Shown here piece by piece: positions 1 to 26,372 of a DNA stretch of 64,000 nt. The position numbers were made by a program, and so were the translations under genes. The notes below the pieces were generated by a model. That model was not told the origin of the DNA. It did not search any database and was given only the letters and a program-made list of their open reading frames with translations. The stretch covers positions 1 through 64,000 of IMG/VR virus record IMGVR_UViG_3300043446_005562, one strand, 5' to 3'. Numbering within the stretch: the first letter of the stretch is position 1; every line of letters begins with the position of its first letter.

Positions 1-201
1 CCGGTACTCTTTCCAATCGTATACGGTAAAGACCTCTCCGGTTCGGGTCTCGCAGGTCCAGTCGAAATTGACCTTGTCCTCACCCGTATTATCCGAGTAC
101 TGGGGCGCGCCCAGCATTTCAATGAGGTCGTTTACTGAACACACAAAGACGGTATCGTGAAAGGAAGTGCCGCTTGCTGATTTACTTGATAGTGTTGCCA
201 T
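1..201 (-). CDS. conserved phage hypothetical protein, 3' end cut by window edge
   Basis: Hand translation from ATG at 201: MATLSSKSASGTSFHDTVF...DKVNFDWTC...VFTVYDWKEYR. Open to position 1; early promoter at 227-259. Confidence 0.75.
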   Translation of the reverse strand, partial: MATLSSKSASGTSFHDTVFVCSVNDLIEMLGAPQYSDNTGEDKVNFDWTCETRTGEVFTVYDWKEYR

Positions 202-288
202 GGTCTGATTGTTTTAAGGTTATGGAGTAAATATAAGTATTTTATTTGACACGGAAAAATTTTTATGTCAAAAGTTATTAACAATTGG

Positions 289-582
289 CTAGGCCTTGCG
301 AACCTCAACCCTTTCGATTCGGGTTAGGCTGCCGATCGGCGACCACATGGCCTCCTCAAACGAAGAGTATTTTGACCTGTCCCAGAGCCAGACCCGGCCG
401 TCGCGTTTACAGATTTCTCGAGCAGCGCGCTCGGTCAGGCTAGCCTCGGAAAGCCGGCCTTCAAATAGAGCATGCGCATATACTGTCTTAAAGGTTGCGC
501 TTACGCAGACGGGTCTCTCTGTCTCTCCTGCTCGAGAGGTAAGGAGCCAGACCTGTCTGCTTTTTCGGGTTGGACTAGGCAT
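289..582 (-). CDS. hypothetical protein (97 aa)
   Basis: ATG start, same strand as neighbours. Confidence 0.6.
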   Translation of the reverse strand: MPSPTRKSRQVWLLTSRAGETERPVCVSATFKTVYAHALFEGRLSEASLTERAAREICKRDGRVWLWDRSKYSSFEEAMWSPIGSLTRIERVEVRKA

Positions 583-685
583 TTAACTTATCTTTTTTCT
601 GGATTTAACACGCAGTAGATGCAGAAGCCTATACAGATTAGGGATATTATCGCGCACATAGATATAATTGATTACTGGATTTATA

Positions 686-937
686 TTACCCAAGTTCTTC
701 GCTTAACCTCTTAAGGTCCGCGCATTTCTCGTACTGTTCCTTCTTCTCAAAGTGGGAGATCATGGTCCAGATAGCCTGCTTCTTCTCGTCGATTGGGGCA
801 CCGTCGTGTACAACATCCCGGAATTCTCCGGCCAAGGCTTCGTAAAGCCTGTCCATGAATCCGTCGTAGTCGGTCTCTCGAAGCCGGATAAGCTCCAGCA
901 GAATATCATGGTAGTTGCGATTCTTTTTAGTTGACAT
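686..937 (-). CDS. small protein with C-terminal UvrB/UvrC (UVR)-like motif
   Basis: FEKKEQYEKCADLKR resembles the UVR motif. Confidence 0.65.
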   Translation of the reverse strand: MSTKKNRNYHDILLELIRLRETDYDGFMDRLYEALAGEFRDVVHDGAPIDEKKQAIWTMISHFEKKEQYEKCADLKRLSEELG

Positions 938-1004
938 ATCTTTATTTATACTTTTTATTCTGATTCACCCAGCGTGAATGGTATCCTCTTTATAATATAA
1001 TACT

Positions 1005-1037
1005 AAAAAAGGGGTTTCGGATTACCAAGACCCCTTT
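1005..1037 (-). terminator. intrinsic terminator
   Basis: AAAGGGGT/ACCCCTTT stem with T-run on minus strand, after gene 1056-1382. Confidence 0.6.
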
Positions 1038-1055
1038 AATAATGGATTGCATCCG

Positions 1056-1382
1056 CTATATGAATTGGGTTAGGAATCCCGTCGGCCAGCCCGCTTCGTC
1101 CATCTCAAAGTCCATGTCGATCTGAATCATGTCCGAATAGATGCTTATTTTCTGCCACCCATCCATTAGGCGGAAGCAGTTTGAGATCAATTGATCTACC
1201 GATTCGTCGGGTACAAACTCATCGTCCAGCCTGACGGATCCATCGTCCAACGTTTGGATGTCAACGTTTAGGTACTCTCGCATTATGTCTATTGCATCTT
1301 CAGCTTTAAGCTCGGCTAGATAAGCATCGACCTGGCCGAATGCTTCGGAGATTTCAATTCTGAATAATTCTGGATTTCTCAT
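1056..1382 (-). CDS. acidic hypothetical protein (108 aa)
   Basis: ATG start, followed by terminator. Confidence 0.75.
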   Translation of the reverse strand: MRNPELFRIEISEAFGQVDAYLAELKAEDAIDIMREYLNVDIQTLDDGSVRLDDEFVPDESVDQLISNCFRLMDGWQKISIYSDMIQIDMDFEMDEAGWPTGFLTQFI

Positions 1383-1562
1383 CTTTGTCTGGATTTAGGG
1401 TTTATAAAAGAACAGAATACAGGTCAACACGACCGCGATTGCTATTATCAACAGCGCGCCATTGATGAAGGCGTCTCGCTTAAGCGCTTTAACTTCTTTT
1501 TCTGAAAATTTCTTTTGCATAGTGTATAGAGTTAATTATTATTGATTGTACTATTATTTGGA

Positions 1563-1985
1563 TTAAACGTTCTCGACAAAGGCATAGTCTGCCCATGACT
1601 TGGCCCCTGCTGCACGGTAGTTGGCTTGGCTGTATAGATTAGTATTGCTCCAATCTTGATTTATGTCGCCCACCTTCATGGTTAAGAAGAGTTCAGTATC
1701 CATAAGGATTACCTTATTACCCTTACGCGCGAACACCGTCAGCCAGGAATCCGTGCCTTCGGCCTTGAATTGAATTGTTTGCAGAGCTCCCTTCTTGAAT
1801 CCGCGAAATACATCGATCGCGCGTTTCCATTCCGGCCCGCTTTGCCAATTGGCCTGCACGCCAAGATCGTCGACAACTGTCAAGAAGCCGGCCTGCACCT
1901 TAACGATTGCTCTGAACTCTCCTTTGCTAGAGCCGATGAAATCGACCTGATTGATTCCTTCTAAATTAATGATTTGGTTTTTCAT
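1563..1985 (-). CDS. hypothetical protein (140 aa)
   Basis: ATG directly behind early promoter at 2008. Confidence 0.8.
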   Translation of the reverse strand: MKNQIINLEGINQVDFIGSSKGEFRAIVKVQAGFLTVVDDLGVQANWQSGPEWKRAIDVFRGFKKGALQTIQFKAEGTDSWLTVFARKGNKVILMDTELFLTMKVGDINQDWSNTNLYSQANYRAAGAKSWADYAFVENV

Positions 1986-2060
1986 GGTTTGATTGATTTT
2001 GGTTTAAGTAAATATAATACTTTTTCTTGACACGGAAAAATTTATTTTAAAATATTTTCT

Positions 2061-2369
2061 TTAAATCCACTGTGAACCTAGATGGCTGCAGGTCGGGGAA
2101 TACTTCTCGAGCAGGCTGGCTCCAACCTGCAGCAGAAAGCCGGATGGGGTTATGCTCCTGATCGGGCTGTCCTTATCGATTACGACCGAGCCCAGCTGAT
2201 TGCCACGGCTGTCCAGGGTCAGGACGTAGCTGCCGTCTCGAACAAGCAGAAAATCCGAACAGAATCCCTGTAGCTGGGCGCTTGACGCAATTTGAGTCCA
2301 GCCAATTTCCTGACCGGACTCGTCTAGTATTTGGAGGCTAGTACCTCGCTGTATAACATTACCTATCAT
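2061..2369 (-). CDS. hypothetical protein (102 aa)
   Basis: ATGA overlap with upstream ORF. Confidence 0.7.
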   Translation of the reverse strand: MIGNVIQRGTSLQILDESGQEIGWTQIASSAQLQGFCSDFLLVRDGSYVLTLDSRGNQLGSVVIDKDSPIRSITPSGFLLQVGASLLEKYSPTCSHLGSQWI

Positions 2370-2584
2370 GCTCTTGTTTTTGAATTTTTAATACACTCGT
2401 TAAACTCTTCTTCCGACAGGTCTGGCGTATCTTCCGTAACAAGCTTTAGTAGGGTTGCGGCTTCTATCTGTGTTACTAGGGAGTCCCTATCCACCCGGCC
2501 CGCGAATGGATCGCCTTCGGAAAATAGAATCTCAACTGCGGTCTCGGCCCAGAAGCGGGCTTCAAATTGGGTTGTCATTATCAT
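2366..2584 (-). CDS. hypothetical protein (72 aa)
   Basis: ATGA overlaps on both sides, coupled to sigma gene. Confidence 0.7.
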   Translation of the reverse strand: MIMTTQFEARFWAETAVEILFSEGDPFAGRVDRDSLVTQIEAATLLKLVTEDTPDLSEEEFNECIKNSKTRA

Positions 2585-3300
2585 ACGCCTACCTCCTTTC
2601 TCATTTTAGCGCGGGCAACCTTTAGCGCGCGATTAACTTCGACTGGGGTTTTACCAACGGCTTCCGCAACCTCCTTGGTGGAGAGCCCGTCTCCAACGAG
2701 ACCGTAGAACAGCTCCACGATTTGACGTTCGGTTGGTTTAAGAACGTTAAGTACTCTACGGAGTATTCTGGTTTGGTCCTCACTTTCGAATGGGTCTTGG
2801 AAATCTTCTCTCAACAAGAGATCGCCGACCGTATCCTCACCGTCCTCGCCGATTGGGCGGTCCAATTGGATGTTACGCATGTTGATGCTTTCGCCTGCCA
2901 TCTTGCGTTTGTAAAGATCGTATTCCTGATTTACCGGAATTCGAACGGTACGACCGATCTCGCAAAGAGCAAGGTTTAATCTCTTACGTATCCAGAACTG
3001 GGCGTAGGTAATAAACTTCACGTCTTTATCTGGGGTAAAACGACGAGCGGCTTCGATAAGACCCGCATTACCCTCTTGAATTAGGTCATCGATGGAAAGA
3101 CCCATACCGATAAACTTATTCGCAAGCGTAACAACGAATTTTAGATTTGCTTGTACTAATTGCTGTAGCGCGCGATCGTCTCCCTTTTGGATACGTGCTG
3201 CTAATTGAAGCTCCTCAGCTTTGGTGAGAGGAACTGCTACTGATGCAATATCCTTGAAGTATTGCGGTAGGCTTTCTGATGTTTCGAATCTTTTCGACAT
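2581..3300 (-). CDS. RNA polymerase sigma-70 factor, RpoD-like, lacking region 1.1
   Basis: Region 1.2 (SLPQYFKDI), region 2 (LVQANLKFVV, DDLIQEGNAGLIEAARRF, FITYAQFWIR), region 4 HTH (LKPTERQIVELFYGL...STKEVAEAVG). Confidence 0.93.
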   Translation of the reverse strand: MSKRFETSESLPQYFKDIASVAVPLTKAEELQLAARIQKGDDRALQQLVQANLKFVVTLANKFIGMGLSIDDLIQEGNAGLIEAARRFTPDKDVKFITYAQFWIRKRLNLALCEIGRTVRIPVNQEYDLYKRKMAGESINMRNIQLDRPIGEDGEDTVGDLLLREDFQDPFESEDQTRILRRVLNVLKPTERQIVELFYGLVGDGLSTKEVAEAVGKTPVEVNRALKVARAKMRKEVGV

Positions 3301-3392
3301 GGTTGATTTGGTTTAGTTGATTATTATAATGTAAATATAAACAATATTTTTGACAAGTAAAAACTTTTTGTGAATTATTTTCAAAAAAGTTA

Positions 3393-3611
3393 TTAACGTT
3401 TTTTAGACCATTCGGCAATTACTTCACAACCATAAAATCCATGGGAGCCAAAGCCAAAGGAGTCTCCGGGTTTTGGCGAACAAAGCACAACCATTTGATT
3501 CCACCTAGATTTCTTTTCTTCGCTAAAGGATTCCTTTGCTTGGTCAAGATTGTCAAATAGATTGTAAGAGTCTCCATCCTCGGAGCAAGAAATTAAAAGA
3601 TACATTTTCAT
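3393..3611 (-). CDS. hypothetical protein (72 aa)
   Basis: Own early promoter; stop codon lies inside GTTATTAAC box. Confidence 0.7.
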   Translation of the reverse strand: MKMYLLISCSEDGDSYNLFDNLDQAKESFSEEKKSRWNQMVVLCSPKPGDSFGFGSHGFYGCEVIAEWSKKR

Positions 3612-3701
3612 AGTTTATTAGTTTAATTGATTAATATAAGTAAATATAACAATAATACTTGACAGTAAAAAACTTTTTGTGAATTATTTTCAAAAAAGTT
3701 A

Positions 3702-3941
3702 TTAACATACGAACCACTGTCCGCAGTTACGGCACTCAGAAGCATCGTCGACTCTAAAAGCCCTGATTATCCATGACCACTTGTCCGAGTTAGTTGGTTC
3801 CTGTGGGTCCGCATAGACCTCTCTTGCCTCGCAGTGAGGGCAACATAGACCCTGTGGATTTGGTTCTGAACTACCGGTTCTTTCGATTATTAATCGCTTC
3901 ATTTCCGGATTTTTGATTTCTGATAGGTTTGATGTCTGCAT
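3702..3941 (-). CDS. zinc-ribbon protein
   Basis: CPHC...CRNC; own promoter; stop inside box. Confidence 0.75.
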   Translation of the reverse strand: MQTSNLSEIKNPEMKRLIIERTGSSEPNPQGLCCPHCEAREVYADPQEPTNSDKWSWIIRAFRVDDASECRNCGQWFVC

Positions 3942-4002
3942 GATTGATTTGATTGGTTAGTAAGTAAATATAACAATAATTCTTGACACGAAAAAATTTA
4001 TT

Positions 4003-4353
4003 TTACAGAAAATTATTCAATTTGATTTTACGTTTCTCCGTGTACTTCATACGGCCGAAATTCTTGAAACGAAATAGGAAGTCCATTTCACGAAGCACGT
4101 CCCTACCGTAGGTCTTTGAGAGTCTGGTCTCGATAAGTTCAAGCTTCTTATTCCATTTATGAATTGACTGATTACCTTCAAGCATTGCTTTACGTAGAAC
4201 ATCAACACTAAAGCCAGGCCTCTCGCAGTACATCTCCTCTCTCCAGTCAGAGATGTTGTCTGCCATTGCATCAATTTGGCGAGTCAATTGATATACTTCC
4301 TTTACTTGTACATTGCTTGCGTAGAGAGTTGGTATCTTTTTTCTTTTTCCCAT
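4003..4353 (-). CDS. basic hypothetical protein (116 aa)
   Basis: Own early promoter at 4377. Confidence 0.75.
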   Translation of the reverse strand: MGKRKKIPTLYASNVQVKEVYQLTRQIDAMADNISDWREEMYCERPGFSVDVLRKAMLEGNQSIHKWNKKLELIETRLSKTYGRDVLREMDFLFRFKNFGRMKYTEKRKIKLNNFL

Positions 4354-4445
4354 AGTTTTAGTTTTTTTAGGTTTAAGTAAACATAAACAATTACTTTGAC
4401 ACGGAAAAATTTTTGTGAATTATTTTTCAAAAATTATTAACAGCG

Positions 4446-4469
4446 AAAAGGGGTCCTACCACGGACCCC
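4446..4469 (-). terminator. intrinsic terminator
   Basis: GGGGTCC/GGACCCC 7-bp stem plus T-run on minus strand. Confidence 0.7.
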
Positions 4470-4503
4470 AGTTCTATCAATCAACCAAGTAATATTTTAT
4501 TTT

Positions 4504-4785
4504 CTAATTTAGATGGATACCTGTCTCTCGCAACAGGTTCTCTAACTCTATCTCTGAGTCTGACATGCCCTGTTGACGCTTGACCTGCTTCATGCAGAAC
4601 TGCATTAACAGTTGAGTAAGCTCATGTGTGCTGCGCTCGTCCTGGGTTGCGGACAGGAGGGTTATTAATCCATTTCCGATTAGGATGAGCTCGGGGTCAG
4701 AGGTCTTTAATCCGCCCGCGATTAGGCTGTTGGCTAGGGTTTCGAGCTCGGCTCGGGTTTTCTCTCTTATCTCTTTTCTGTTCAT
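4504..4785 (-). CDS. hypothetical protein (93 aa)
   Basis: ATG, helical composition. Confidence 0.75.
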   Translation of the reverse strand: MNRKEIREKTRAELETLANSLIAGGLKTSDPELILIGNGLITLLSATQDERSTHELTQLLMQFCMKQVKRQQGMSDSEIELENLLRETGIHLN

Positions 4786-4814
4786 GATCGATTGGTTATT
4801 GGTTAGGATTTATA

Positions 4815-5009
4815 TTACTCTTTTCCGATCGTGATGGTCTTGTTCATTGCATAGATTCTTTCCCAGAACTCGTTGTAACCAAGCTCCTGCTCTGGATTAA
4901 CCGTGCTCTGGGCTCTCGCGCCGCCGCCATAGGTTAAGTCAATGGGTTCTCCGATTGATGGATCGAAACCTTGTAGTCTGTCGATTAGGGATTTAAAGAT
5001 TTTCTTCAT
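4815..5009 (-). CDS. hypothetical protein (64 aa)
   Basis: ATG with A-rich leader. Confidence 0.65.
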   Translation of the reverse strand: MKKIFKSLIDRLQGFDPSIGEPIDLTYGGGARAQSTVNPEQELGYNEFWERIYAMNKTITIGKE

Positions 5010-5103
5010 GGTCTATTTGGATTTAATTGGTTACTTGATTAGATGCCAGCCGGGCCCTGTGCTTGGGCCTGGTCCTGGACTTGATGGGCTGTTTGGGTCT
5101 GCT

Positions 5104-5316
5104 TCATTTGGCTTTAGGAATTAAACGAATTAGCGATTGAGTTAATAGACCCGGATCTTCGTCGTACCGGCCGCGAGACCAGCCGTCTACCAGACTCTTT
5201 AGGTCTTTGGAATTCTTGGTTGAGATGCCGGATTCCTCGGCGGACTTGATCGTCTCGGCCGGAATATCCATCCACGTTTTCATTTCTCGGAGCATTGATG
5301 CTAGGGTTGTTGTCAT
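5104..5316 (-). CDS. hypothetical protein (70 aa)
   Basis: Own early promoter at 5339. Confidence 0.7.
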   Translation of the reverse strand: MTTTLASMLREMKTWMDIPAETIKSAEESGISTKNSKDLKSLVDGWSRGRYDEDPGLLTQSLIRLIPKAK

Positions 5317-5369
5317 AGTTTTTGGTTTGATTGATTAGTTAAATATAAGCATTTTAATTGACACGGGAA

Positions 5370-5933
5370 AATAAAGTTATTAACAGTTACTAGGGAGTCC
5401 GGCTAGACCCTTCGCCGCCAAGAACTGGATGCGCTCGATCCGGGCCTGCAATTCCGGCAGGTCCTGTGCCATGCTGTGCAGTATCTTTAGATCGCGTTTG
5501 CTCATGCTTGGCGCGGCCATGGCCAGCGCAACGTCAACTGGATTACCAAGCCGCATGGCCTCGAGAACAGGAGCAGAGCCGGCTGGGGAGATTGATCCTG
5601 GAATCTGGCAGTTTGCGCCGAATTCAAAGCGCCAAAAGCCGGGTCTGTTCCAGCTGTCGATGAGGTTGGCGTCCAGCATCTGACGTACTCGGCTTATGTG
5701 CTTGCTTGTCGTACGGCTGTACTTGCCATTTGTCACGAGCCGCGGTCTGCGGCCGAGCTCCTTTGCAAAGAACTCTACTGTTGCAACATGGGTTTCGTAG
5801 CTTATAACCCTGTCCCCGACTAGGAACAGGTTCTGCGCGATCTTTAGGGTTGGTTTGAGTTTCATGGTTTAAATATAATATTTTTTGTTGAGACCTGACA
5901 ATAAAGTTATTAACAGTTACTAGGGAGTCCGGC
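5370..5933. repeat. perfect 34-bp direct repeat (5370-5403, 5900-5933) flanking one gene-plus-promoter cassette
   Basis: AATAAAGTTATTAACAGTTACTAGGGAGTCCGGC read at both positions. Confidence 0.95.
5380..5865 (-). CDS. hypothetical protein (161 aa)
   Basis: ISYETHVA...YSRTTSKHI motif common in phage early proteins; C-terminus encoded by the direct repeat. Confidence 0.75.
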   Translation of the reverse strand: MKLKPTLKIAQNLFLVGDRVISYETHVATVEFFAKELGRRPRLVTNGKYSRTTSKHISRVRQMLDANLIDSWNRPGFWRFEFGANCQIPGSISPAGSAPVLEAMRLGNPVDVALAMAAPSMSKRDLKILHSMAQDLPELQARIERIQFLAAKGLAGLPSNC

Positions 5934-5938
5934 CGAAT

Positions 5939-6460
5939 CTATACAGATTCAACCGGTGCGAATACTTCATTGACATTAAAATCTCCTGAACGGCTGCTGT
6001 TGAGCATGCGCTCCAGGCAGACAGGCCCGAGAGCGGTGTGGATCGATTCCGGATGGGTAAGCGGTAATCCGCAAGCGCAGCATCTGCCCTCGTGGAATAG
6101 ACCTACACGACCGCGTAGAATCTCTGGATTCTTGATCGCTGACACGACCCAGCCTAGGGCGCGAGCTAAGCGTGAATCCGGTCTGACATTGCGGCCGAGC
6201 TTGACGTGCATTGTCTCGGCAAAGAGAGTGCCGGCGAACTGCGAGCTTTGTCGGCCGTCGTTAAGCAGGGAAATATCAACGTAATAGATCGGCAGCTTGA
6301 TCTTGCGATCCTGCTTGTCGCGCAGCTGCTTGATCTTCACGGTCATGTGGGTGCCTGCCGCAAGGTTACGGAACGTAAGCACCGCACGGCCGGCTAACGC
6401 GAGCTTGGGTAGGGCAAGCGGGTTAAGGTTCGGGCGGGGAATGTTTCTGTGGTTTCTCAT
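5939..6460 (-). CDS. DUF6011-like zinc-binding protein (173 aa)
   Basis: HEGRCCACGLPLTHPESIHTALGPVC; start moved to ATG at 6460 behind promoter 6484. Confidence 0.7.
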   Translation of the reverse strand: MRNHRNIPRPNLNPLALPKLALAGRAVLTFRNLAAGTHMTVKIKQLRDKQDRKIKLPIYYVDISLLNDGRQSSQFAGTLFAETMHVKLGRNVRPDSRLARALGWVVSAIKNPEILRGRVGLFHEGRCCACGLPLTHPESIHTALGPVCLERMLNSSRSGDFNVNEVFAPVESV

Positions 6461-6666
6461 GGTAGATTGGTTTAATTGATTAAGTAAATATAACCAATTA
6501 CTTTCAAATAAAAAAATTTTTTGTGAATTATTTTTCAAAAGTTATTAACAAAGTTATGGACACTGGCGGACTGAAGTGCAGGTCGGAGTATACCCTCTGC
6601 GATCCGGTTGGGGATCGAACCTTAAAAACCGGGCGCTGGGCCCGGTCCTATGGATTATCCGGCTCG

Positions 6667-6810
6667 TTAGAACTCGAAGGCTGAGGTTGAGGAGTAGTTG
6701 CCGGTTACAAGGTTCGCGATTGCGAACAGGATTCCTGATACTGCGATTGCTGCGACGCATACGGTCCAGACTTGCATTACGCGTAGGGCGATGATTTGTG
6801 GTTTGCTCAT
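6667..6810 (-). CDS. small membrane protein (47 aa, not in ORF track)
   Basis: MSKPQIIALRVMQVWTVCVAAIAVSGILFAIANLVTGNYSSTSAFEF; own promoter at 6840. Confidence 0.65.
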   Translation of the reverse strand: MSKPQIIALRVMQVWTVCVAAIAVSGILFAIANLVTGNYSSTSAFEF

Positions 6811-6883
6811 GGTAGATTTGATTGATTGGTTAAACATAGGTAAATATAATAATTATCTTTGAGACCTGAAAACTTTTTGTGAA

Positions 6884-7054
6884 TTATTTTCCAAAAGTTA
6901 TTAACATTTTTGCGGACATGCTGAAGAGCGCGGCGAAGGTAAATGCCAGAATCGGCAAGGTTTCTAGAGGTTGGGGAGTTACGACTAGGGCGATAAGACC
7001 CGCAGCGCTCGCAAAGAACACTGTTGCTAGGGCAAGGATTTCTAGTTTTTTCAT
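6884..7054 (-). CDS. small two-helix membrane protein (56 aa, not in ORF track)
   Basis: MKKLEILALATVFFASAAGLIALVVTPQPLETLPILAFTFAALFSMSAKMLITFGK; own promoter at 7078. Confidence 0.65.
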   Translation of the reverse strand: MKKLEILALATVFFASAAGLIALVVTPQPLETLPILAFTFAALFSMSAKMLITFGK

Positions 7055-7138
7055 GGTGTATAAATTAATTGGTTAAAGCTAATATAACCAAAAAACCCCA
7101 GACTAAAAAATCTGGGGTCATTTATTTTTCAAAAGTTA

Positions 7139-7429
7139 TTAACATTTCTGGCCGCAGTCCCGGCAACGCCAAAGCGTGAGACCGCTTTCGTGACGAACGG
7201 CCGCGTACTGATTCTTGTGCTGACACTCCGCTTCCTGCTCCGCATAGAGCTTTAAGCAGGCCGGACAGCCGATCGTCTCGAGACCGGAGAGCCTGGCCCA
7301 GTTGTTGCTTAGAGCTGGCGTGCCGCACAGGATTCCGTGTCCGCTTTTGTAGATGTGGGCTGTGTTACTCCACACGTTGCCCTTGTTGCCGAAGATGGAG
7401 AAGTTGGGTTTAAGGTCTTTTACTTGCAT
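7139..7429 (-). CDS. Cys/His-rich zinc-finger protein
   Basis: H..CG, CPAC, C.H, CRDC; own promoter; stop inside box. Confidence 0.75.
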   Translation of the reverse strand: MQVKDLKPNFSIFGNKGNVWSNTAHIYKSGHGILCGTPALSNNWARLSGLETIGCPACLKLYAEQEAECQHKNQYAAVRHESGLTLWRCRDCGQKC

Positions 7430-7511
7430 ATCGATCTTTTAATTGGTTAAGTAAATATAACAAAAAAACCCCAAACAAAAAAATCTGGGGTCATTTTCTT
7501 TTAAACTTTTT

Positions 7512-7598
7512 CTAGAGGCAATGCATAAGCAAGCCGTAAAGGCCAATGCCTGCCAAAAAGTAGATCAGGTTATTCAACCACTTTGGATATCTGTCCAT
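7512..7598 (-). CDS. possible 28-aa membrane peptide
   Basis: MDRYPKWLNNLIYFLAGIGLYGLLMHCL after an A-rich leader. Confidence 0.4.
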   Translation of the reverse strand: MDRYPKWLNNLIYFLAGIGLYGLLMHCL

Positions 7599-7626
7599 GC
7601 TTCTCGTGTTAGGTGTTAATAATGTC

Positions 7627-7917
7627 TTATTCAAAGAGACCTTCGGTCAGCTGCATGAAGTAATCGAAATAGAAGCCGTAGCCCGCCGCTCTTAGAGCCT
7701 TGCTTATCTGATGGGCAATGTGGCCTCTTGGCTCAGTATCGAATATCTCGCCGTGCTTCAAGGAGATCTTCTTCATGCCCTGCTTAATGAGATCCTGAAC
7801 CTCAACCCCTGTCACGCGACGTTGGCTCATTATCTTTTTGGTTATCTTGTCTACTAGACTTTGGCAGGCTCTTTCTCCTGCGTCTGAAAACATCTCGTAA
7901 TAGGGTTTCTTTTCCAT
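7627..7917 (-). CDS. hypothetical protein (96 aa)
   Basis: ATG; TATAAT-like element upstream. Confidence 0.75.
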   Translation of the reverse strand: MEKKPYYEMFSDAGERACQSLVDKITKKIMSQRRVTGVEVQDLIKQGMKKISLKHGEIFDTEPRGHIAHQISKALRAAGYGFYFDYFMQLTEGLFE

Positions 7918-7957
7918 GGTCTAATGTGGTTTGGTTAATATTATATTACCATAGGGG

Positions 7958-8119
7958 CTAGGCCTCGGGTCCGATGAGGTCCCAGGCAGTTTCGCCGGTC
8001 GGCTGGCCCCTGAAGGTAATTTCGTAGTTGGGGTCCTGGCCGCTCTCGACGATATCGGCTAAGAGGGCCGGTAGGGTTGGGAATTCCTTTTGGTAGTAGG
8101 CGCAGTCTAATGAATACAT
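7958..8119 (-). CDS. hypothetical protein (53 aa, not in ORF track)
   Basis: MYSLDCAYYQKEFPTLPALLADIVESGQDPNYEITFRGQPTGETAWDLIGPEA; promoter at 8145. Confidence 0.7.
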   Translation of the reverse strand: MYSLDCAYYQKEFPTLPALLADIVESGQDPNYEITFRGQPTGETAWDLIGPEA

Positions 8120-8196
8120 ATAAAAAGATTTAATTGGTTAGGATACAAATATAACCAAAATACTTGACACGGAAAAATTTATTTTAACCAATTTCT

Positions 8197-8724
8197 CTAG
8201 CTGAATACAAGGACCCCATCGTCAGCTGCAAGCTCAAACGCCTTTAGAAAATCAAGGTAAATTTCCAGGAACCAGCCGTTATCCTCGCGTTCAGGATCGC
8301 CGACGTACGCCTCGGCCCTGTGCTTGTATTTAACAAAGTCTTGATAGAGACTCTTTGCAACGGGTCCGCCTATCGCGCCATCGCAGTCCGAATGGTTTAT
8401 TAGACCAAAGAACGGCGCGACCCGCCATTCGGTCTCGTTGTTCCATACCCCTTCGGGCCCGACTCCAAGCATGGTCTGGCTCAGCACCCTACGCCATTGG
8501 TTGTAGCCCGAGTAGGAGCCCGCCCTGAAGGAGAAGCTCTCGCTTTCCGCGGTTGCGTACCAGGTTCCGGGCCTCAAGCCCTTGAATGCCTGCTCATCGA
8601 ACGTTTCGATCGTTATTACCTCTTCGCCGCGTTCGGATAAGCCAAGCTCTTCAAGCCTCTTTTCGCGTGCGCCGAACTCGTGTTCCTCCTTTAGCTTGGA
8701 GTAGGCGTAGATATCTAGTCCCAT
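8197..8724 (-). CDS. conserved phage hypothetical protein (175 aa)
   Basis: MGLDIYAY...GSYSGYNQWRR...LINHSDCDG motifs. Confidence 0.8.
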   Translation of the reverse strand: MGLDIYAYSKLKEEHEFGAREKRLEELGLSERGEEVITIETFDEQAFKGLRPGTWYATAESESFSFRAGSYSGYNQWRRVLSQTMLGVGPEGVWNNETEWRVAPFFGLINHSDCDGAIGGPVAKSLYQDFVKYKHRAEAYVGDPEREDNGWFLEIYLDFLKAFELAADDGVLVFS

Positions 8725-8760
8725 AATAATCTCTTTGTTTCTTCTATTACTTATAATACC

Positions 8761-8795
8761 AAAAAAAGAAAGGGTCTACTCTCGCGGACCCTTTC
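8761..8795 (-). terminator. intrinsic terminator
   Basis: GAAAGGGTC/GACCCTTTC stem plus T7 on minus strand. Confidence 0.7.
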
Positions 8796-8819
8796 AATTG
8801 TGGAGCTTAATCGGTTGGA

Positions 8820-9059
8820 TTAGCCGATCAAGCTCATGTTCGTCTTGCGACCGCGTGTCATGTCGAAAGCCTTGTTTACGATACGATCGTTGCGGTATAA
8901 TCCGTTAAGTACTTCGCTCACGAAGTTAGGGGAGAAGCCCGTGCTCTCCGCAACTCGGGCTACATCGCCCATGCGTTTGCGAGAATTGATTACTGCGATC
9001 TTTGCCGTGATTGGCAACTTGCGATAGGTCATACCTATTTTGCTTTGATTCTTTGTCAT
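8820..9059 (-). CDS. Cro/XRE-like helix-turn-helix DNA-binding protein
   Basis: VARVAESTGFSPNFVSEVLNG. Confidence 0.7.
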   Translation of the reverse strand: MTKNQSKIGMTYRKLPITAKIAVINSRKRMGDVARVAESTGFSPNFVSEVLNGLYRNDRIVNKAFDMTRGRKTNMSLIG

Positions 9060-9126
9060 GTTACTTGAAGTTAAGTTTGTTATAAGGTTATATTACCCAT
9101 TGCTCTAACCGATTGGCCGGCCATCC

Positions 9127-9360
9127 TTAATCTTTTTTCTCCGGCTTGGCTGGATTGGGTTTAAGCAGCAGGCTCGAGAGCATGGATAATCCCCAGGCCT
9201 GGAGCACGGAGATTACAGGTAGTCCAAATATCTCAGGACAGAGCCAGTTCCAGAGCCACTTGACCGGGAAGGCCATTATTATTGATACGATACCAGCAAT
9301 CAGGATTGCGGCGAGAGCAACTCCTATCCGGGTTGCAATTTCTAAGTTGGGTCTTTTCAT
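9127..9360 (-). CDS. membrane protein (77 aa)
   Basis: Two hydrophobic segments; WLWNWL.PEIFGLP motif. Confidence 0.75.
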   Translation of the reverse strand: MKRPNLEIATRIGVALAAILIAGIVSIIMAFPVKWLWNWLCPEIFGLPVISVLQAWGLSMLSSLLLKPNPAKPEKKD

Positions 9361-9383
9361 CTTATTTGGGTTTAAAAATTTAT

Positions 9384-9671
9384 TCAGTTATTTTCCGGTA
9401 GGCTCCATTCGGACAAGAGCTCCTTCTGCCTGACCAGGCTCTCTGCCCATTCAAACTCTTCTCGAGCAACAGCCTCTTCTATGGCGGGGTCCAGCACCCG
9501 ATAGAAGCTTTGTAATAGGTACTCCTTGTATTCCGTTCCCCATTCTTCCCGACCGGCCAGCTGGATAAGATGCTGTTTAAATTCCCAGATTACCCGGTCT
9601 ATCCGAGCCCAGTCCCGGCCTGCCCGCTCGAGAGCAACGATAACCTTGTCTAACATTAAGTCTGCCTGCAT
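9384..9671 (-). CDS. small protein with UVR-like motif
   Basis: IEEAVAREEFEWAESLVRQ. Confidence 0.65.
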   Translation of the reverse strand: MQADLMLDKVIVALERAGRDWARIDRVIWEFKQHLIQLAGREEWGTEYKEYLLQSFYRVLDPAIEEAVAREEFEWAESLVRQKELLSEWSLPENN

Positions 9672-9748
9672 TTTCAGATTTATTTGGATTACAGAATACT
9701 ATACTCTACCGGTCAGATAGGTTTCAAGCAGCGGACCGGGCAGACTGC

Positions 9749-10012
9749 CAATAGACAACTAATAGACAACCCAAACAACCTCCCGCTCTCGAGCAGGCAG
9801 ACCAGACCTGTTACCTGGCAGGTCTATTGGATTACCCGATACGGCTGGCCAGGCTACTGCCAGGTACTGCCCCAGGGGTCAGCCCGGTAGGGTCCAGGTA
9901 CTGCCCCGGGTACAGCCCCAGGGTCACTCCAGGAGGCTGCCCAGGATGACTCCAGGAGCTATACCCAGGTGCCCCGGGGTCACCAAATAGTGACTCCTGG
10001 AGGTGCCCCGGG
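9749..10012. repeat. GC-rich degenerate ~11-12-bp tandem repeat tract at the strand switch
   Basis: CC(A/G/T)GG or CCGG cores at 9849, 9860, 9872, 9884, 9894, 9906, 9918, 9929, 9941, 9952, 9965, 9974, 9996, 10008; AATAGACAAC twice near 9749-9769. Confidence 0.8.
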
Positions 10013-10260
10013 TGCACTTTATGCTGCTATAAAAAAGTATACCGGGAGCAGAAACCATGACTTTTTCCTTTTTTTCCAAAATCCCCTAGCCTCGGGACCC
10101 ATCCCCGGACCAATGCGGCCGGTTCCACGGAGTGCCTGTGTGCGTTTCGAAAAGTCACCGGCCTCGGATTCAAGAATTTCTCCCCGGGCTGGAGAGGCCG
10201 CTGGAACCTTTTCCGGTTTTGCTGTATAATAGACTATATTAATTAAAAACACTACAGCTT

Positions 10261-10470
10261 ATGGAACTTACACCAGTAAAATCCTCTACTGTCGCCAAGG
10301 TAGGATACAATCCAGAAAAATCGGAATTGCTCGTTGAATTCTCTTCGGGCGCCCAATACAGGTATCTCGCCGTTGAGCAAGGGGTCTATGAATCCCTGCT
10401 CTCAGCAGAGTCCGTTGGTAAATTCCTTAACGCTAATATTAAAGAGCAGTATGAGTTCCAAAAGATCTAA
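10261..10470 (+). CDS. KTSC domain protein
   Basis: VKSSTVAKVGYNPEKSELLVEFSSGAQYRY...LLSAESVGKFLNANIK. Confidence 0.9.
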   Translation: MELTPVKSSTVAKVGYNPEKSELLVEFSSGAQYRYLAVEQGVYESLLSAESVGKFLNANIKEQYEFQKI

Positions 10471-10759
10471 TCAGGGGGTTCTACGATTCGGGTTGGGCCA
10501 TCTGGGTCTGACCCTTGTGTTTCGTCATAAATGGGATAGACCCGGCAGCATGTGGACCCAGGAGTTGGAGTACCGTACCAAGACGCTTGGGGTCTTTTTC
10601 AAAACCTGGGAATCAATCGGTACCTACCAGTCGGGTCGGGATCTCTTCTCGCCGGGTAATCTTGGCAGATCATGGATGTTTGGTCTTAACCTGATCGTTG
10701 CGAAGTGTTGGATTGAGGTTTCTTGGCGAGTAAAAATATTTAAAATAACGGACCCATGA
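10451..10759 (+). CDS. aromatic-rich hypothetical protein (102 aa)
   Basis: Start moved to ATG at 10451; ATGA overlap with next ORF. Confidence 0.55.
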   Translation: MSSKRSNQGVLRFGLGHLGLTLVFRHKWDRPGSMWTQELEYRTKTLGVFFKTWESIGTYQSGRDLFSPGNLGRSWMFGLNLIVAKCWIEVSWRVKIFKITDP

Positions 10760-10881
10760 TTGGCCTACTCAAACTCCTGAACCACGAGATCTGGCGTCAC
10801 TGCCGAAACTGTGGACTCCAATTCGATATTAGGGCCTCGGACCACTGCGACGGCTGCGGCCACGGTCCCCAGACCCCCTAG
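10756..10881 (+). CDS. 41-aa zinc-ribbon peptide (not in ORF track)
   Basis: MIGLLKLLNHEIWRHCRNCGLQFDIRASDHCDGCGHGPQTP. Confidence 0.55.
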   Translation: MIGLLKLLNHEIWRHCRNCGLQFDIRASDHCDGCGHGPQTP

Positions 10882-10940
10882 CCGGGCACCGGCCTAGTTA
10901 CCCCCGACGCGCCACCCCAAAAAAAAAAACCACGATAACA

Positions 10941-11162
10941 ATGAAAATCCAGAAAAATACCAAGGCTCCAACCGAGGCCCAGCTCATTGAGCTTGCAAAA
11001 CGCATGCTAGAGCTCTCCACCAAATTTCCCAACAACTACGACCTTGGCGAAAGGGTTCGCAGCCTTCACGAGCTTGCGGTTTCCAACCCCGATCTGCTGA
11101 TAAATAACCAGAAAGACCGCGACACAGATGAGTCGAATAAAACCATTCTTGGCCCACATTAA
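10941..11162 (+). CDS. hypothetical protein (73 aa)
   Basis: FPNNYDLGERVR motif seen in small phage proteins. Confidence 0.65.
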   Translation: MKIQKNTKAPTEAQLIELAKRMLELSTKFPNNYDLGERVRSLHELAVSNPDLLINNQKDRDTDESNKTILGPH

Positions 11163-11763
11163 CGAGAACGATAAGTTCAACCGCCTTAAACAACTGGGCC
11201 TCTCCCAAAACGACACCCCGCAGGAAACTTTCAGCCAGCTATCCGAGGTATTTCAAAATGATCCGCAGCTGAGCTCACTCTTCCAGCAGATCGATGCCCG
11301 CGTTGAAGAGCTCTTTGCTCCAATTCTGGCAAGAGCGGACGAGGAGTCGGATGAATGGCAGGAAATCATGGACGACATGGGCTGGAGCTGGGCCGAGGAT
11401 GCTGGGAACTACTGGATCTGGAACGCGATCTCTGGCTTTGGAGAAGGTGGCGGCATGTACGAATCAGAGGAACACCCAGAGCGTGAGCGCAATGTTGAAA
11501 GATTAAGAGGGCTAGGCCTTGCACCCAAAAAGGAATTCGATGAGCGTTGGGAAGAGATGATGGATGAATGGGGCTCGGATCCCGATATTGATAGGGCAAT
11601 CACAACGCTCAAGGCCAAGACCAACGAGATCATCGACAAGCACATTGACCTAGACGATTATGAGGACGAAGGTGAATGGAATGAGCGTGTTGATTGGATG
11701 TATCAAGCTAGCATTGACGATCTCGGCTTTTTTGAGTACATGGTTGCATCAGGCTCGCTATAA
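11128..11763 (+). CDS. acidic putative virion internal protein
   Basis: N-terminal MSRIKPFLAHINE leader; RLKQLGL and RLRGLGL motifs. Confidence 0.75.
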   Translation: MSRIKPFLAHINENDKFNRLKQLGLSQNDTPQETFSQLSEVFQNDPQLSSLFQQIDARVEELFAPILARADEESDEWQEIMDDMGWSWAEDAGNYWIWNAISGFGEGGGMYESEEHPERERNVERLRGLGLAPKKEFDERWEEMMDEWGSDPDIDRAITTLKAKTNEIIDKHIDLDDYEDEGEWNERVDWMYQASIDDLGFFEYMVASGSL

Positions 11764-11795
11764 TATAAATAATAAGACAAAAATATAAACAAAAA

Positions 11796-12581
11796 ATGAA
11801 ACACACAATCATTAAAGATTTTAAAGGCTGGAACCGCCTGTTTGAAGCTGAAACAGCCGGTACGGCTGGCTCAGCCGGGGTTGCCGGTACAACCGGTACA
11901 GCTGGTACTTCCGGTACTGCCGGTACCGCAGCCGCTGCTCCGCTAACCGCAATCACAGGTGCGGACGGAGCCCTAACCGCTGACGATATTAAAAAGGTGC
12001 AGGCTGTTGTCTACAATGCACCTCTCACCGACACCAAATCATGTGACGGTAAAGTTGGGCCAAACACCATTGCTAAAATCAAGGAGTTTAGAACCGCTAA
12101 CTCAATCACAGACGAAACGCTTGAGCCAACTCAAACCACAATCGGGCCAAAAACCCTTGCCAAAATTGCCGAAAAGATCGCGGCAGGCTTTACGCCCGGC
12201 GCAGCTGCAGGTTCAGCCGGCACTGCAGGTACCGCAGGCACTGTGTTTGATCAACGTAATCAAAACGACGACAAAATTGCAATGGGCATCTGCGATCAGA
12301 TCGTTGCAAAATTCAAGGAAACCGAGTTTTGGAAACCATTTAAGGGTACCTTTAACGATGATGAGTCTGCGGCCGGTATGGCCTACAACAACTGGTACAC
12401 GACCACGATCGTACCGTTGGTTAAGACGCTTAGAGCGGGCGACCCCAACATTGCAAAGCTGGAGGCGGCTGACAAATCGACCCGTGCAAAACTACAGGGC
12501 GGAACCGCAAACGATACTTCATCTTGGAGCATTGATACGCTAAACGGGCCGATGCAGTACACGGTCAACACCGACTTCTAA
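11796..12581 (+). CDS. putative virion protein with AGTAG low-complexity linkers and a peptidoglycan-binding-like segment
   Basis: MKHTIIKDFKGWNRLFE leader; CDGKVGPNT...IGPKTL. Confidence 0.75.
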   Translation: MKHTIIKDFKGWNRLFEAETAGTAGSAGVAGTTGTAGTSGTAGTAAAAPLTAITGADGALTADDIKKVQAVVYNAPLTDTKSCDGKVGPNTIAKIKEFRTANSITDETLEPTQTTIGPKTLAKIAEKIAAGFTPGAAAGSAGTAGTAGTVFDQRNQNDDKIAMGICDQIVAKFKETEFWKPFKGTFNDDESAAGMAYNNWYTTTIVPLVKTLRAGDPNIAKLEAADKSTRAKLQGGTANDTSSWSIDTLNGPMQYTVNTDF

Positions 12582-24757: not shown

Positions 24758-25132
24758 ATGTTTAAGAAATTTGATGAATTTAATGAAACCTTGAATGAAG
24801 GTTTTTGGGACTGGCTGACCGGCAAATCCGAAAAGGGAGAAAAGAAGGAAAAGTCAACGAGCGCAAAAGAGGGTCCAATCGATTCACAAGTTGAAGCCTA
24901 CTACAAAACGCTGCAAGATTTTGCGGACTCAAATAAATCAATTGAGGTCCAAGCGGCCGGTAGTATGGAATATTCTAAGCTGGTTGAAGACATTCAGCTT
25001 GCGCTGGAATTTTTGGGTTATAAACTTACTAAATACGGAGTCGATGGTTATTTTGGACCAGAAACGGCCGAAGCAATCGTTAAATTTAATGAGGACACCC
25101 TAAAGAAAATACCCGATAGCCAACATGATTAA
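24758..25132 (+). CDS. peptidoglycan-binding domain protein
   Basis: IQLALEFLGY...GVDGYFGPETAEAI; MFKKFDEFNETLNE leader. Confidence 0.8.
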   Translation: MFKKFDEFNETLNEGFWDWLTGKSEKGEKKEKSTSAKEGPIDSQVEAYYKTLQDFADSNKSIEVQAAGSMEYSKLVEDIQLALEFLGYKLTKYGVDGYFGPETAEAIVKFNEDTLKKIPDSQHD

Positions 25133-26372
25133 AGGATTCGACCAATTTGCTGGAAAATTAAATGAGGCAGCCAACGGTAAATTGAATACTGATGATTTGG
25201 TTGCAATTCAACCGTTAGGCAAAAGCGGCGGCAATCATAAATTGAATGCGGAGGCCGCAAAAGCCTATGAAGAAATGAAAGCCGCTGCTGAAGCGGACGG
25301 AATTACCTGGGGAATAACTGATTCCTATCGAGATTATGAAGCCCAAGTTAGTGTTGCTGCACGTAAGGGTCTTTATAAAAATGGCGGACTTGCTGCAGTA
25401 CCCGGAACTTCAAATCACGGTTGGGGTAGCGCGCTAGATCTCAAATTAGATTCAGACGCCCAAGACTGGTTAAAGAAAAACGCTTCAAAATTTGGATTCT
25501 CAACCATTCCCAGAGAGCCTTGGCACTGGGAACACAAAGCAAGCGTAGATTCAGCAAAGGGCGGAAAGGAAGGAACCGATTCATCAGCTAAGGTTGGAGC
25601 AGTTTTAATAGACTCTGATTTAATTAAGCGGTTAATTTCCAAATTAAAGGAAAAGGGTTTTAGCCAAAAGGACCTTGATAAAAAATCCGACCTGCAACCG
25701 GGTAAGGGTGCAAAATTCAAAGGAGGCGGAGGCTTTCCAGCTGAGAACATGAAGGCTCTTGAAAAGGCAATGGACGATCACGGTATAACAAATGAGTACG
25801 CAAGAAAAGCAATTCTTGGAGTTATTTCAAAAGAGTCTCCAAACCTTGCGTCTGAGATAAGCTATTCAACAACAAGTCCTTCCAGAATTAGAGAAGTATT
25901 TCCAAGTAAGTTCGGCAGCATGTCGGACGAAGAGATCAATGATATTAAAAAGGACGATTCTAAATTTTGGGATATTGTTTACGGTGGAAAATACGGTAAT
26001 ACTGAGCCGGGCGATGGTTCAAAATACCGAGGCCGTGGTTTTAACGGTATAACTTTTAAATCAAATTACGAAAATTTACAGAGAATATACGAAAGAGAGG
26101 GTTCTAGACTTGGATCAATTGATATTGTTAAAAATCCTGAGCTACTTGAAAAACCTGAAGTTGCCGCAGAATTCGCGGTTCTGTTTTTTCTAGATTCATT
26201 CAAGCGCAAGGGTAAAAATCCAAACGATTATTCGGACCTTGAATCTGCCGTAACTGATTACGTTCAATCAAATGCAGGTTGGGGTACTTCCCTTGCGGGA
26301 GCAGTCACCTCATCCGGCCTGCAAAAGGCAATGGCATTCGCTCAAACTCTATCTAAAACTCAAACTGCTTAA
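25125..26372 (+). CDS. bifunctional cell-wall hydrolase: M15B (VanY-like) peptidase plus GH19-like lysozyme
   Basis: SYRDYEAQ, AVPGTSNHGWGSALD, EPWHWE; YGGKYGNTEPGDGSKYRGRGFNGIT. Confidence 0.88.
   Translation: MIKGFDQFAGKLNEAANGKLNTDDLVAIQPLGKSGGNHKLNAEAAKAYEEMKAAAEADGITWGITDSYRDYEAQVSVAARKGLYKNGGLAAVPGTSNHGWGSALDLKLDSDAQDWLKKNASKFGFSTIPREPWHWEHKASVDSAKGGKEGTDSSAKVGAVLIDSDLIKRLISKLKEKGFSQKDLDKKSDLQPGKGAKFKGGGGFPAENMKALEKAMDDHGITNEYARKAILGVISKESPNLASEISYSTTSPSRIREVFPSKFGSMSDEEINDIKKDDSKFWDIVYGGKYGNTEPGDGSKYRGRGFNGITFKSNYENLQRIYEREGSRLGSIDIVKNPELLEKPEVAAEFAVLFFLDSFKRKGKNPNDYSDLESAVTDYVQSNAGWGTSLAGAVTSSGLQKAMAFAQTLSKTQTA

What the first reader, a model, noticed from the sequence alone, without database searches (positions are those of the whole stretch)
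5370..5933. Promoter-box cassettes: 34-bp direct repeat, and stop codons supplied by the box
Seen: a perfect 34-bp repeat brackets gene 5380-5865 with its promoter, and encodes that gene's last residues. Four early genes (3393, 3702, 5380, 7139) end exactly on the TAA inside TGTTAATAAC. Known: T4-type phages shuffle early genes by recombination between repeated promoter elements (PeSL-type cassettes). Inference: box-to-box recombination inserts and excises genes, with the box providing a ready stop codon, much like an integron array without an integrase.
Basis: partly seen in the sequence, partly recalled or inferred. Interest (0 to 1): 0.6.

Follow-up and report, generated by a model that had tools for sequence, protein, structure and literature searches.

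The report
Promoter cassettes that shuffle phage genes
Two identical 34-base promoter heads flank one small gene in a freshwater giant phage, and near-identical sister strains show that such repeated heads are where single genes are gained, lost and swapped; this mechanism is already known from T4-type phages.

Summary
They bracket gene A (5380-5865, minus strand, DUF8033) and its promoter. Four genes stop on the TAA inside TGTTAATAAC.

The window opens a 252.6-kb uncultivated freshwater phage with a Gp23-type capsid. Bases 1-8700 hold about 20 small minus-strand genes. Twelve have their own conserved promoter, and nine have the box upstream.

Strains 97-99% identical to the window differ by whole cassettes, with junctions inside the repeated heads:
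- g72: 309 bp, 39-bp repeat.
- g56a: 238 bp, junction in the box.
- g116: junction in the promoter core.
- A 191-bp insert inside the 34-mer's second copy, flanked by a 15-nt duplication.

More distant relatives lack A or carry it elsewhere. No near-identical strain lacking A was found, and some indels are not at boxes.

The 34-mer is not a fresh scar. It joins an oriented motif (core CTCCCTAGT), the palindromic box and a T-tract. The motif is under nucleotide-level selection. In relatives it is confined to the early region and always accompanies an oppositely oriented IS607-type HTH-resolvase homologue. Its role is open.

The parts
5900..5933 (-). Copy 1 of the 34-bp repeat. Non-coding head of gene A's promoter cassette: 15-nt motif 5916-5930, box 5906-5915, T-tract.
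5370..5403 (-). Copy 2 of the 34-bp repeat. Head of the g70 promoter cassette. It also encodes the last 8 codons and the stop of gene A: motif 5386-5400, box 5376-5385.
5380..5865 (-). Gene A, 161 aa, DUF8033 family, function unknown. The tail after KGLA is a read-through into the repeat and is predicted disordered.
5866..5899 (-). Core promoter and leader of gene A (GTCTCAA, 10 nt, TTATATTTA, then ATG).
5939..6460 (-). Gene B, 173 aa, DUF6011. In relatives it is always followed by the motif, but by different genes.
5104..5316 (-). Gene g70 (70 aa), expressed from the cassette headed by copy 2. It sits at other places in L013, L088 and L150.
5317..5369 (-). Core promoter and leader of g70.
2472..2486 (-). 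Third copy of the 15-nt motif, inside the 72-aa gene after the sigma gene (codes DSLVT). Conserved at this place in relatives.
3359..3397 (-). Lower copy of a 39-bp perfect repeat (box plus upstream AT-rich element), head of the sigma-gene promoter.
3668..3706 (-). Upper copy of the 39-bp perfect repeat, head of the g72 promoter.
3393..3611 (-). Gene g72, ends on the box TAA. The whole 309-bp cassette is absent from strains L160, L161 and L154, with one hybrid head left.
3702..3941 (-). Gene g79, ends on the box TAA (box 3698-3707).
4003..4353 (-). Gene g116. The cassette is absent from L160, L161, L149 and L154, with the junction in the promoter core.
6884..7054 (-). Gene g56a, reads through box 6897-6906 in another frame. 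The 238-bp cassette is absent from L149, with the junction in the box and upstream element.
7139..7429 (-). Gene g96b, ends on the box TAA (box 7135-7144).
7094..7119 (-). Terminator-like stem-loop sitting where the -35 region of the next promoter would be (PeSL-like composite). A second one lies at 7467-7492 and a third at 4450-4469.
2581..3300 (-). Sigma-70-family gene, the conserved anchor of the array.

Best explanation
The 34-bp repeat is the shared upstream head of two copies of one class of early-promoter cassette. These cassettes sit in a hyperplastic array of small genes in an uncultivated freshwater phage of the T4 superfamily.

Read in the direction of transcription, a cassette head holds an oriented motif (core CTCCCTAGT), a 9-bp palindromic box (GTTAATAAC) and a T-tract. 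The core promoter and a short leader follow.

The heads are repeated every few hundred bases, so they give 15-40 nt of homology. General recombination, by phage or host, then deletes, inserts or replaces single gene-plus-promoter units. This is the PeSL type of modular shuffling.

The stop codon in the box is a by-product. The box reads TAA TAA in one frame and backs up any gene that abuts it. Gene A reached it only after a 5-nt loss removed its own stop after KGLA.

Shown: the anatomy, the conservation and the cassette polymorphisms with their junctions. Inferred: promoter activity, early timing, the recombination pathway and the direction of each event.
For: Anatomy:
- Promoter and box motifs occur only at 1-8200, all on the minus strand.
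- Twelve intergenic regions share the core promoter and nine have the box.

Junctions in strains 97-99% identical to the window:
- g72 is absent, with one head that joins the left flank of the upper copy to the right part of the lower copy.
- g56a is absent, with a crossover in the box and upstream element.
- g116 is absent, with a crossover in the promoter core.
- L151 and L161 carry a 191-bp insert at 5377-5391, bracketed by a 15-nt duplication of the motif end plus box.

In L010 versus L013, the f35 cassette is bracketed by a 17-nt box repeat. The .51 cassette shows a hybrid box, and one replacement has its border exactly at the box.

Gene order differs widely among 18 relatives. A is absent or sits elsewhere, and five different arrangements follow A.

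The composite of motif, box and short promoter precedes A, g70, f48, f52 and f84 in different genomes.

A's tail: relatives end at KGLA plus stop, and the window lacks 5 nt there. The tail is disordered in the model.

The genome has a Gp23-family capsid gene. The PeSL description matches, including stop codons in the AT-rich head.
Against: - No strain lacking A was seen among about 19 contigs that encode an identical B or g70.
- Logan contigs break at the 34-mer, so a deletion could not have been seen there.
- At least four indels or junctions are not at heads: g96a.123.73-f50-g70 and the L150 junction 7 nt before the g70 start.
- The 34-mer is identical in the window and L009, whose flanks are about 12% diverged, with 53% and 70% identity right beside it. 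Selection on a regulatory element, not only recombination, therefore keeps it.
- Only 3-5 cassettes carry a stem-loop.
- Promoter function, timing and circles are untested.
Confidence: 0.8

Rival explanations
1. Site-specific cassette exchange. The CTCCCTAGT motif inside the 34-mer is the site of the IS607-type HTH-resolvase homologue encoded at the far end of the early region in relatives. That enzyme excises and integrates motif-flanked genes such as A, as in an integron.
For: - The motif and the recombinase homologue co-occur in every genome tested that has either one: 21 of 21 recombinase loci, always on opposite strands. Both are absent from G012 and G013.
- Arrays of 2-5 motif copies with a 57-58 nt period lie at the 5' end of the gene.
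- IS607 transposases bind short direct repeats.
- All copies are co-oriented.
- A sits after B or after f14, both of which are motif sites in other genomes.
- One X12 contig leaves the window exactly at 5387, the box/motif border.
- R90, D166, R167 and R170 are invariant.
Against: - The g72, g56a, g116 and f35 events have junctions in heads that lack the motif, so no special enzyme is needed.
- The canonical nucleophile position is an invariant Ala. The nearby Ser follows a 10-residue insertion and is missing in L086.
- Motif copies lie inside conserved genes (f6, f12, the 72-aa gene), where exchange would be lethal.
- The window's record is cut before the place where the gene would lie.
Confidence: 0.1
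2. Purely regulatory duplication. The two copies are operator-like sites kept identical by selection because A and g70 share one control, and they play no part in gene flux at this locus.
For: - The same 34-mer stands at both places in L009 despite diverged flanks.
- The core motif shows nucleotide-level selection. In f6, only 2 of 89 conserved degenerate codon columns are identical in all 11 genomes, and both lie in the motif.
- The box is a palindrome.
- A is stably present in near-identical strains.
Against: An insertion with a 15-nt duplication lies inside copy 2 in L151 and L161. Five different arrangements follow A's motif in relatives. Regulation and recombination are not exclusive.
Confidence: 0.08
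3. Chance or assembly artefact.
For: None found.
Against: The pair recurs in independent assemblies from other samples. The chance expectation is negligible.
Confidence: 0.01

Closest known systems
PeSL (promoter-early stem-loop) cassettes of T4-type phages (Arbiol et al. 2010, PMC2839356; Comeau et al. 2014, PMC4122927)
   Same: Repeated intergenic cassettes with a host-type early promoter and an AT-rich upstream part that holds the stop codon of the gene before. They are concentrated in hyperplastic regions before small ORFans. Indels and replacements between close relatives end in the cassettes.
   Different: - The promoter consensus differs: weak -35, a conserved GTGTCAA, then TTATATTTAC, and no Shine-Dalgarno.
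- Only a minority of cassettes carry a stem-loop.
- The head holds a palindromic box and, in one subclass, an oriented motif that also occurs inside genes.
- The phage is a very distant, uncultivated member with its own sigma-70-family gene.
- Mini-circles were not tested.
Integron cassette arrays
   Same: Co-oriented single-gene units with a repeated element at each border, and presence/absence of units between relatives.
   Different: No IntI tyrosine recombinase and no attC hairpin sites. Every unit has its own promoter. Most junctions are explained by short homology.
IS607-family serine transposase TnpA with short direct-repeat binding motifs (PMC6188088, PMC4058570)
   Same: The relatives' protein has a MerR-type HTH in front of a resolvase catalytic domain. 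Its best matches among solved structures are IS607-family TnpA. Short co-oriented motif copies cluster by its gene.
   Different: No TnpB and no recognisable element ends. Motif spacing is 57-58 nt rather than about 10. Copies are spread over 10-20 kb and lie inside genes. The active-site serine motif is interrupted.

Membership tests
PeSL-type regulatory cassettes | Repeated intergenic motif with an early, host-type promoter and an AT-rich upstream part | tested here: met
   Twelve intergenic regions share the core. Motifs are confined to 1-8200 on the minus strand. Promoter activity itself was not tested, and a generic sigma-70 scan is not enriched.
PeSL-type regulatory cassettes | Stem-loop (terminator/attenuator) as part of the cassette | tested here: inconclusive
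   Stem-loops with a T-run lie at 7094-7119, 7467-7492 (both replacing the -35 region) and 4450-4469. The two cassettes that flank A have none.
PeSL-type regulatory cassettes | Concentrated in hyperplastic regions in front of small genes of unknown function | tested here: met
PeSL-type regulatory cassettes | Indels and replacements between close relatives end inside the cassettes | tested here: met
   Four events against strains 97-99% identical and three in L010 versus L013. Some other events do not end there.
PeSL-type regulatory cassettes | Stop codon of the upstream gene lies in the cassette's AT-rich head | tested here: met
PeSL-type regulatory cassettes | Mini-circles formed by exchange between neighbouring cassettes | not testable with these tools
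   Only k=31 contigs were on hand, and they break at the 34-mer.
PeSL-type regulatory cassettes | Carried by a T4-type phage | tested here: met
   Gp23-family capsid gene at G000 159628-160932, E 9e-41. Otherwise the phage is very distant: most large proteins have no PHROG, and there is no near DNA match among cultured phages.
Integron | IntI tyrosine recombinase beside attI, attC sites at cassette ends, promoterless cassettes | tested here: not met
   No such gene or site was seen in the array of the window or its relatives. Each unit has its own promoter.
IS607-type serine recombinase system (for the motif) | MerR-type HTH followed by a resolvase catalytic domain | tested here: met
   Met in relatives only. 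The window's record is cut before this place.
IS607-type serine recombinase system (for the motif) | Intact Y-x-R-V-S-S nucleophile motif | tested here: inconclusive
   Y88 and R90 are invariant, and the next-but-one residue is an invariant Ala. A Ser follows a 10-residue insertion in 7 of 8 sequences. D166, R167 and R170 are invariant.
IS607-type serine recombinase system (for the motif) | Short co-oriented repeats bound by the enzyme near its gene | tested here: inconclusive
   The repeats are present and co-occur with the gene in 21 of 21 loci. Binding was not tested.

The most novel reading that the evidence does not exclude
The oriented 9-mer CTCCCTAGT at the core of the 34-mer is the DNA site of a domesticated IS607-type HTH-resolvase. 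This protein is conserved at the end of the early region in this phage clade. It would use the 7-13 co-oriented copies for site-specific exchange of motif-flanked genes. That would be a phage-borne, serine-recombinase counterpart of an integron. A milder form is a region-wide switch that silences the early array.
Probability: 0.12. Interest if true: 0.8.

Novelty: new member of a known kind. Interest (0 to 1): 0.45.

Why it matters
PeSL-type shuffling has been shown mainly in cultured T4-like phages of proteobacteria. Here the same logic appears in a very distant, uncultivated freshwater lineage with a different promoter type. It can be read directly from natural strain variation at single-base resolution. 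This supports the idea that repeated regulatory cassettes are a general engine of accessory-gene flux in large lytic phages.

The array is also a source of small, probably host-takeover or anti-defence genes that turn over between strains.

Separately, the strand-specific motif under nucleotide-level selection, and its strict association with a resolvase-like HTH protein, is an unexplained system worth testing.

Tried and rejected
- Near-identity search of cultured phages found no match.
- A single-protein scan of viral contigs with A found nothing.
- No tRNA or Rfam hits in 1-12000.
- Function of A: Pfam gives only DUF8033. The fold model is good (pLDDT 87), but no PDB fold match reaches E 0.001.
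- Reads test for a variant lacking 5404-5933: only Logan contigs (k=31) were on hand. They end at the 34-mer (pieces 5374-5929, 4906-5398, 5904-6566), so they can show neither a deletion nor a circle.
- The 'skips 309' joint in X12 rests on one multi-piece contig and on one base beyond the shared 39 nt. I do not count it as a clean deletion. The clean evidence comes from L160, L161 and L154.
- Most of the 65 viral-contig hits to the 15-mer are at chance level for that collection. Only records with several hits were relatives.
- Motif as a sigma-type promoter: there are no consistent partner elements at -35 or -10 spacing (by inspection).
- Motif as a T7-like promoter on the other strand: all copies would then point against the genes.
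- Co-variation between recombinase clade and motif: the motif is the same down to 44% identity, so this test has no power.

Full report
WHAT IS THERE

The window is the first 64 kb of a 252,618-bp IMG/VR virus record (41% G+C, CheckV 93%). The same DNA occurs in freshwater, reservoir, river and estuary metagenomes from 11 studies. Cultured phages give no near match, and most large proteins have no PHROG. The genome does have a Gp23-family capsid gene, so it is a remote member of the T4 superfamily.

Bases 1-8700 hold about 20 small genes on the minus strand, around a sigma-70-family gene at 2581-3300. Twelve intergenic regions share a core promoter-like element: GTGTCAA, 10 nt, then TTATATTTAC. 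Nine carry, further upstream, the box TGTTAATAAC, whose inner 9 bp are a palindrome. In the whole record these motifs are confined to 1-8200 and to this strand.

THE OBSERVATION

The 34-bp perfect repeat is real (5370-5403 and 5900-5933) and recurs in independent assemblies. It brackets gene A (5380-5865, DUF8033) and A's promoter. Copy 1 is non-coding, just after gene B (5939-6460, DUF6011). Copy 2 encodes A's last eight codons and its stop.

The four named genes do end on the box TAA. A longer perfect repeat of 39 bp (3359-3397 and 3668-3706) brackets gene 3393-3611 in the same way.

WHY A ENDS IN THE BOX

Fifteen of 18 homologues of A end at or near KGLA. Only the window and its two closest relatives carry the extra GLPSNC. 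In L010, L013 and L083 the stop stands right after KGLA and 2 nt before the motif. The window lacks those 5 nt, so the frame runs through the motif to the TAA of the box. The tail is predicted disordered. L113 shows a second, independent case of A ending on the box. The box is thus a back-stop, not a designed terminus. The PeSL papers already note stop codons in the AT-rich head of the cassette.

DOES GENE CONTENT VARY, AND WHERE ARE THE JUNCTIONS?

I anchored on the sigma gene and on A, and compared 18 non-redundant relatives. The array is hyperplastic. A follows B in the window's clade. It is absent after B in L086, L090, L092, L098, L093 and L099, and lies between f14 and f29 in L088/L089. 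Families g70, g79, g96b, g72 and g56a sit at different places in different genomes.

The decisive material is contigs that encode an identical B or g70 protein and are 97-99% identical in DNA. At single-base resolution:
- L160, L161 and L154 lack the 309-bp g72 unit. They keep one head made of the left flank of the upper copy and the right part of the lower copy.
- L149 lacks the 238-bp g56a unit, with the crossover in the box and upstream element.
- L160, L161, L149 and L154 lack g116, with the crossover in the promoter core.
- L151 and L161 carry a 191-bp insert with a small ORF inside copy 2 of the 34-mer (at 5377-5391), bracketed by a 15-nt duplication of the motif end plus box.

In the 95%-identical pair L010/L013, the f35 unit is bracketed by a 17-nt box repeat, with a single copy at the empty site. 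The .51 unit leaves a hybrid box. One replacement has its border exactly at a box.

Three other indels there are not at boxes; they show 6-nt microhomology or none. The L150 junction lies 7 nt before the g70 start. No near-identical contig lacks A. The contigs laid on the window cannot bridge the 34-mer, so they do not settle this point.

WHAT THE 34-MER IS MADE OF

It is not a fresh scar. L009, whose A protein is 83% identical, has the same 34-mer at both places. Identity drops to 53% and 70% immediately outside the two copies, against about 88% overall. In five strains the copies differ by one base, in the spacer between the 9-mer and the box.

The head is a composite of a 15-nt motif (core CTCCCTAGT), the box and a T-tract. 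This composite, followed by a short form of the promoter, precedes A, g70, f48, f52 and f84 in different genomes.

THE MOTIF

The window's record has only three copies of the 9-mer: the two heads, and 2472-2486 inside a gene.

In relatives there are 7-13 copies, all on the gene strand. They are confined to 10-20 kb and absent from the remaining 230-260 kb. They lie right after stop codons, inside conserved genes, and as a 57-58-nt-period array.

In the ATPase-like gene f6, 89 columns hold a conserved degenerate amino acid across 11 genomes. Only two of them have the same codon in all genomes, and both lie in the motif. The sequence itself is therefore selected.

The array abuts the only oppositely oriented gene of the region. 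That gene encodes a MerR-HTH plus resolvase-domain protein, whose best solved relatives are IS607-family transposases. Gene and motif co-occur in every case examined and are both absent from two more distant genomes. The enzyme's serine motif is interrupted, but its Arg and Asp residues are invariant. The window's record is cut inside the f29 homologue at base 1, so this part of its own genome is missing.

HOW IT MOST LIKELY WORKS

Repeated cassette heads provide short homology. General recombination between them removes, adds or swaps one gene with its promoter. The heads are kept by selection because they are regulatory. This accounts for all the box- and promoter-located junctions, including those without the motif. 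A dedicated enzyme is therefore not needed (confidence 0.8).

Promoter activity, early timing and the recombination pathway are inferences. The promoter shape (T-rich element, 19 nt, TAtaTTTA/G) and the lack of Shine-Dalgarno sequences hint at a Bacteroidota host. That is a weak inference.

The motif may be the binding site of the HTH-resolvase, as regulator or as recombinase. It could also be an RNA-level signal. I could not decide between these.

COMPARISON AND VERDICT

The system works like PeSL cassettes and meets five of their seven listed features. The stem-loop feature is inconclusive, since only some cassettes carry one, and mini-circles are untested. It is not an integron.

The finding is a new member of a known kind and is of moderate interest. 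The motif-plus-resolvase association is the part that could prove new.

Noticed in passing
window 2472-2486, 5386-5400, 5916-5930; relatives G001 173699-184735 and others: The strand-specific 9-mer CTCCCTAGT is under nucleotide-level selection. In relatives it is confined to the early region and forms 57-58-nt-period arrays. It always accompanies an oppositely oriented IS607-type HTH-resolvase homologue (G001 174014-174682). Its function is unknown.
   Followed up: partly
window 6556-6650 (minus strand): A conserved non-coding element: a hairpin with compensatory changes between genomes, followed by an invariant 20-nt stretch containing TATACTCCG. Relatives have 1-3 copies per genome, each behind its own promoter. 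It has no Rfam or tRNA hit and is a candidate small RNA.
   Followed up: partly
window 1-201 and the record's end: The record is cut inside the homologue of gene f29 at base 1. About 10 kb that follows in relatives is missing from this record. That stretch holds the ATPase-like f6, f12, the resolvase homologue and the motif array.
   Followed up: yes
window 5380-5865 versus 5939-6460: Against G001, the A protein is 63% identical while its neighbours B, g93 and sigma are 92, 84 and 96% identical. Nucleotide identity falls at the end of B. A looks like a swapped-in divergent allele.
   Followed up: partly
window 2027-2056, 3350-3378, 3659-3687, 4396-4423 (plus strand): Good sigma-70-type matches (TTGACA, 16-18 nt, AATTAT or AATATT) lie on the strand opposite to the genes, formed by the reverse of the conserved GTGTCAA. 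They are probably incidental.
   Followed up: no
window 11853-11951 and 9859-10016: Runs of 9-nt repeats. The first encodes a Gly-Thr-Ala/Ser triplet repeat inside ORF 11796-12581, which is collagen-like.
   Followed up: no
L116-L118 (distant homologues of A): In these loci a distant DUF8033 gene lies two genes from a protein with the integron-cassette domain VCH_CASS14 (PF18315).
   Followed up: no
window 40091-41383 (minus) and 25125-26372 (plus): An ATP-dependent DNA ligase and an endolysin/peptidase-like protein are the only large ORFs among ten tested that have a PHROG match.
   Followed up: no
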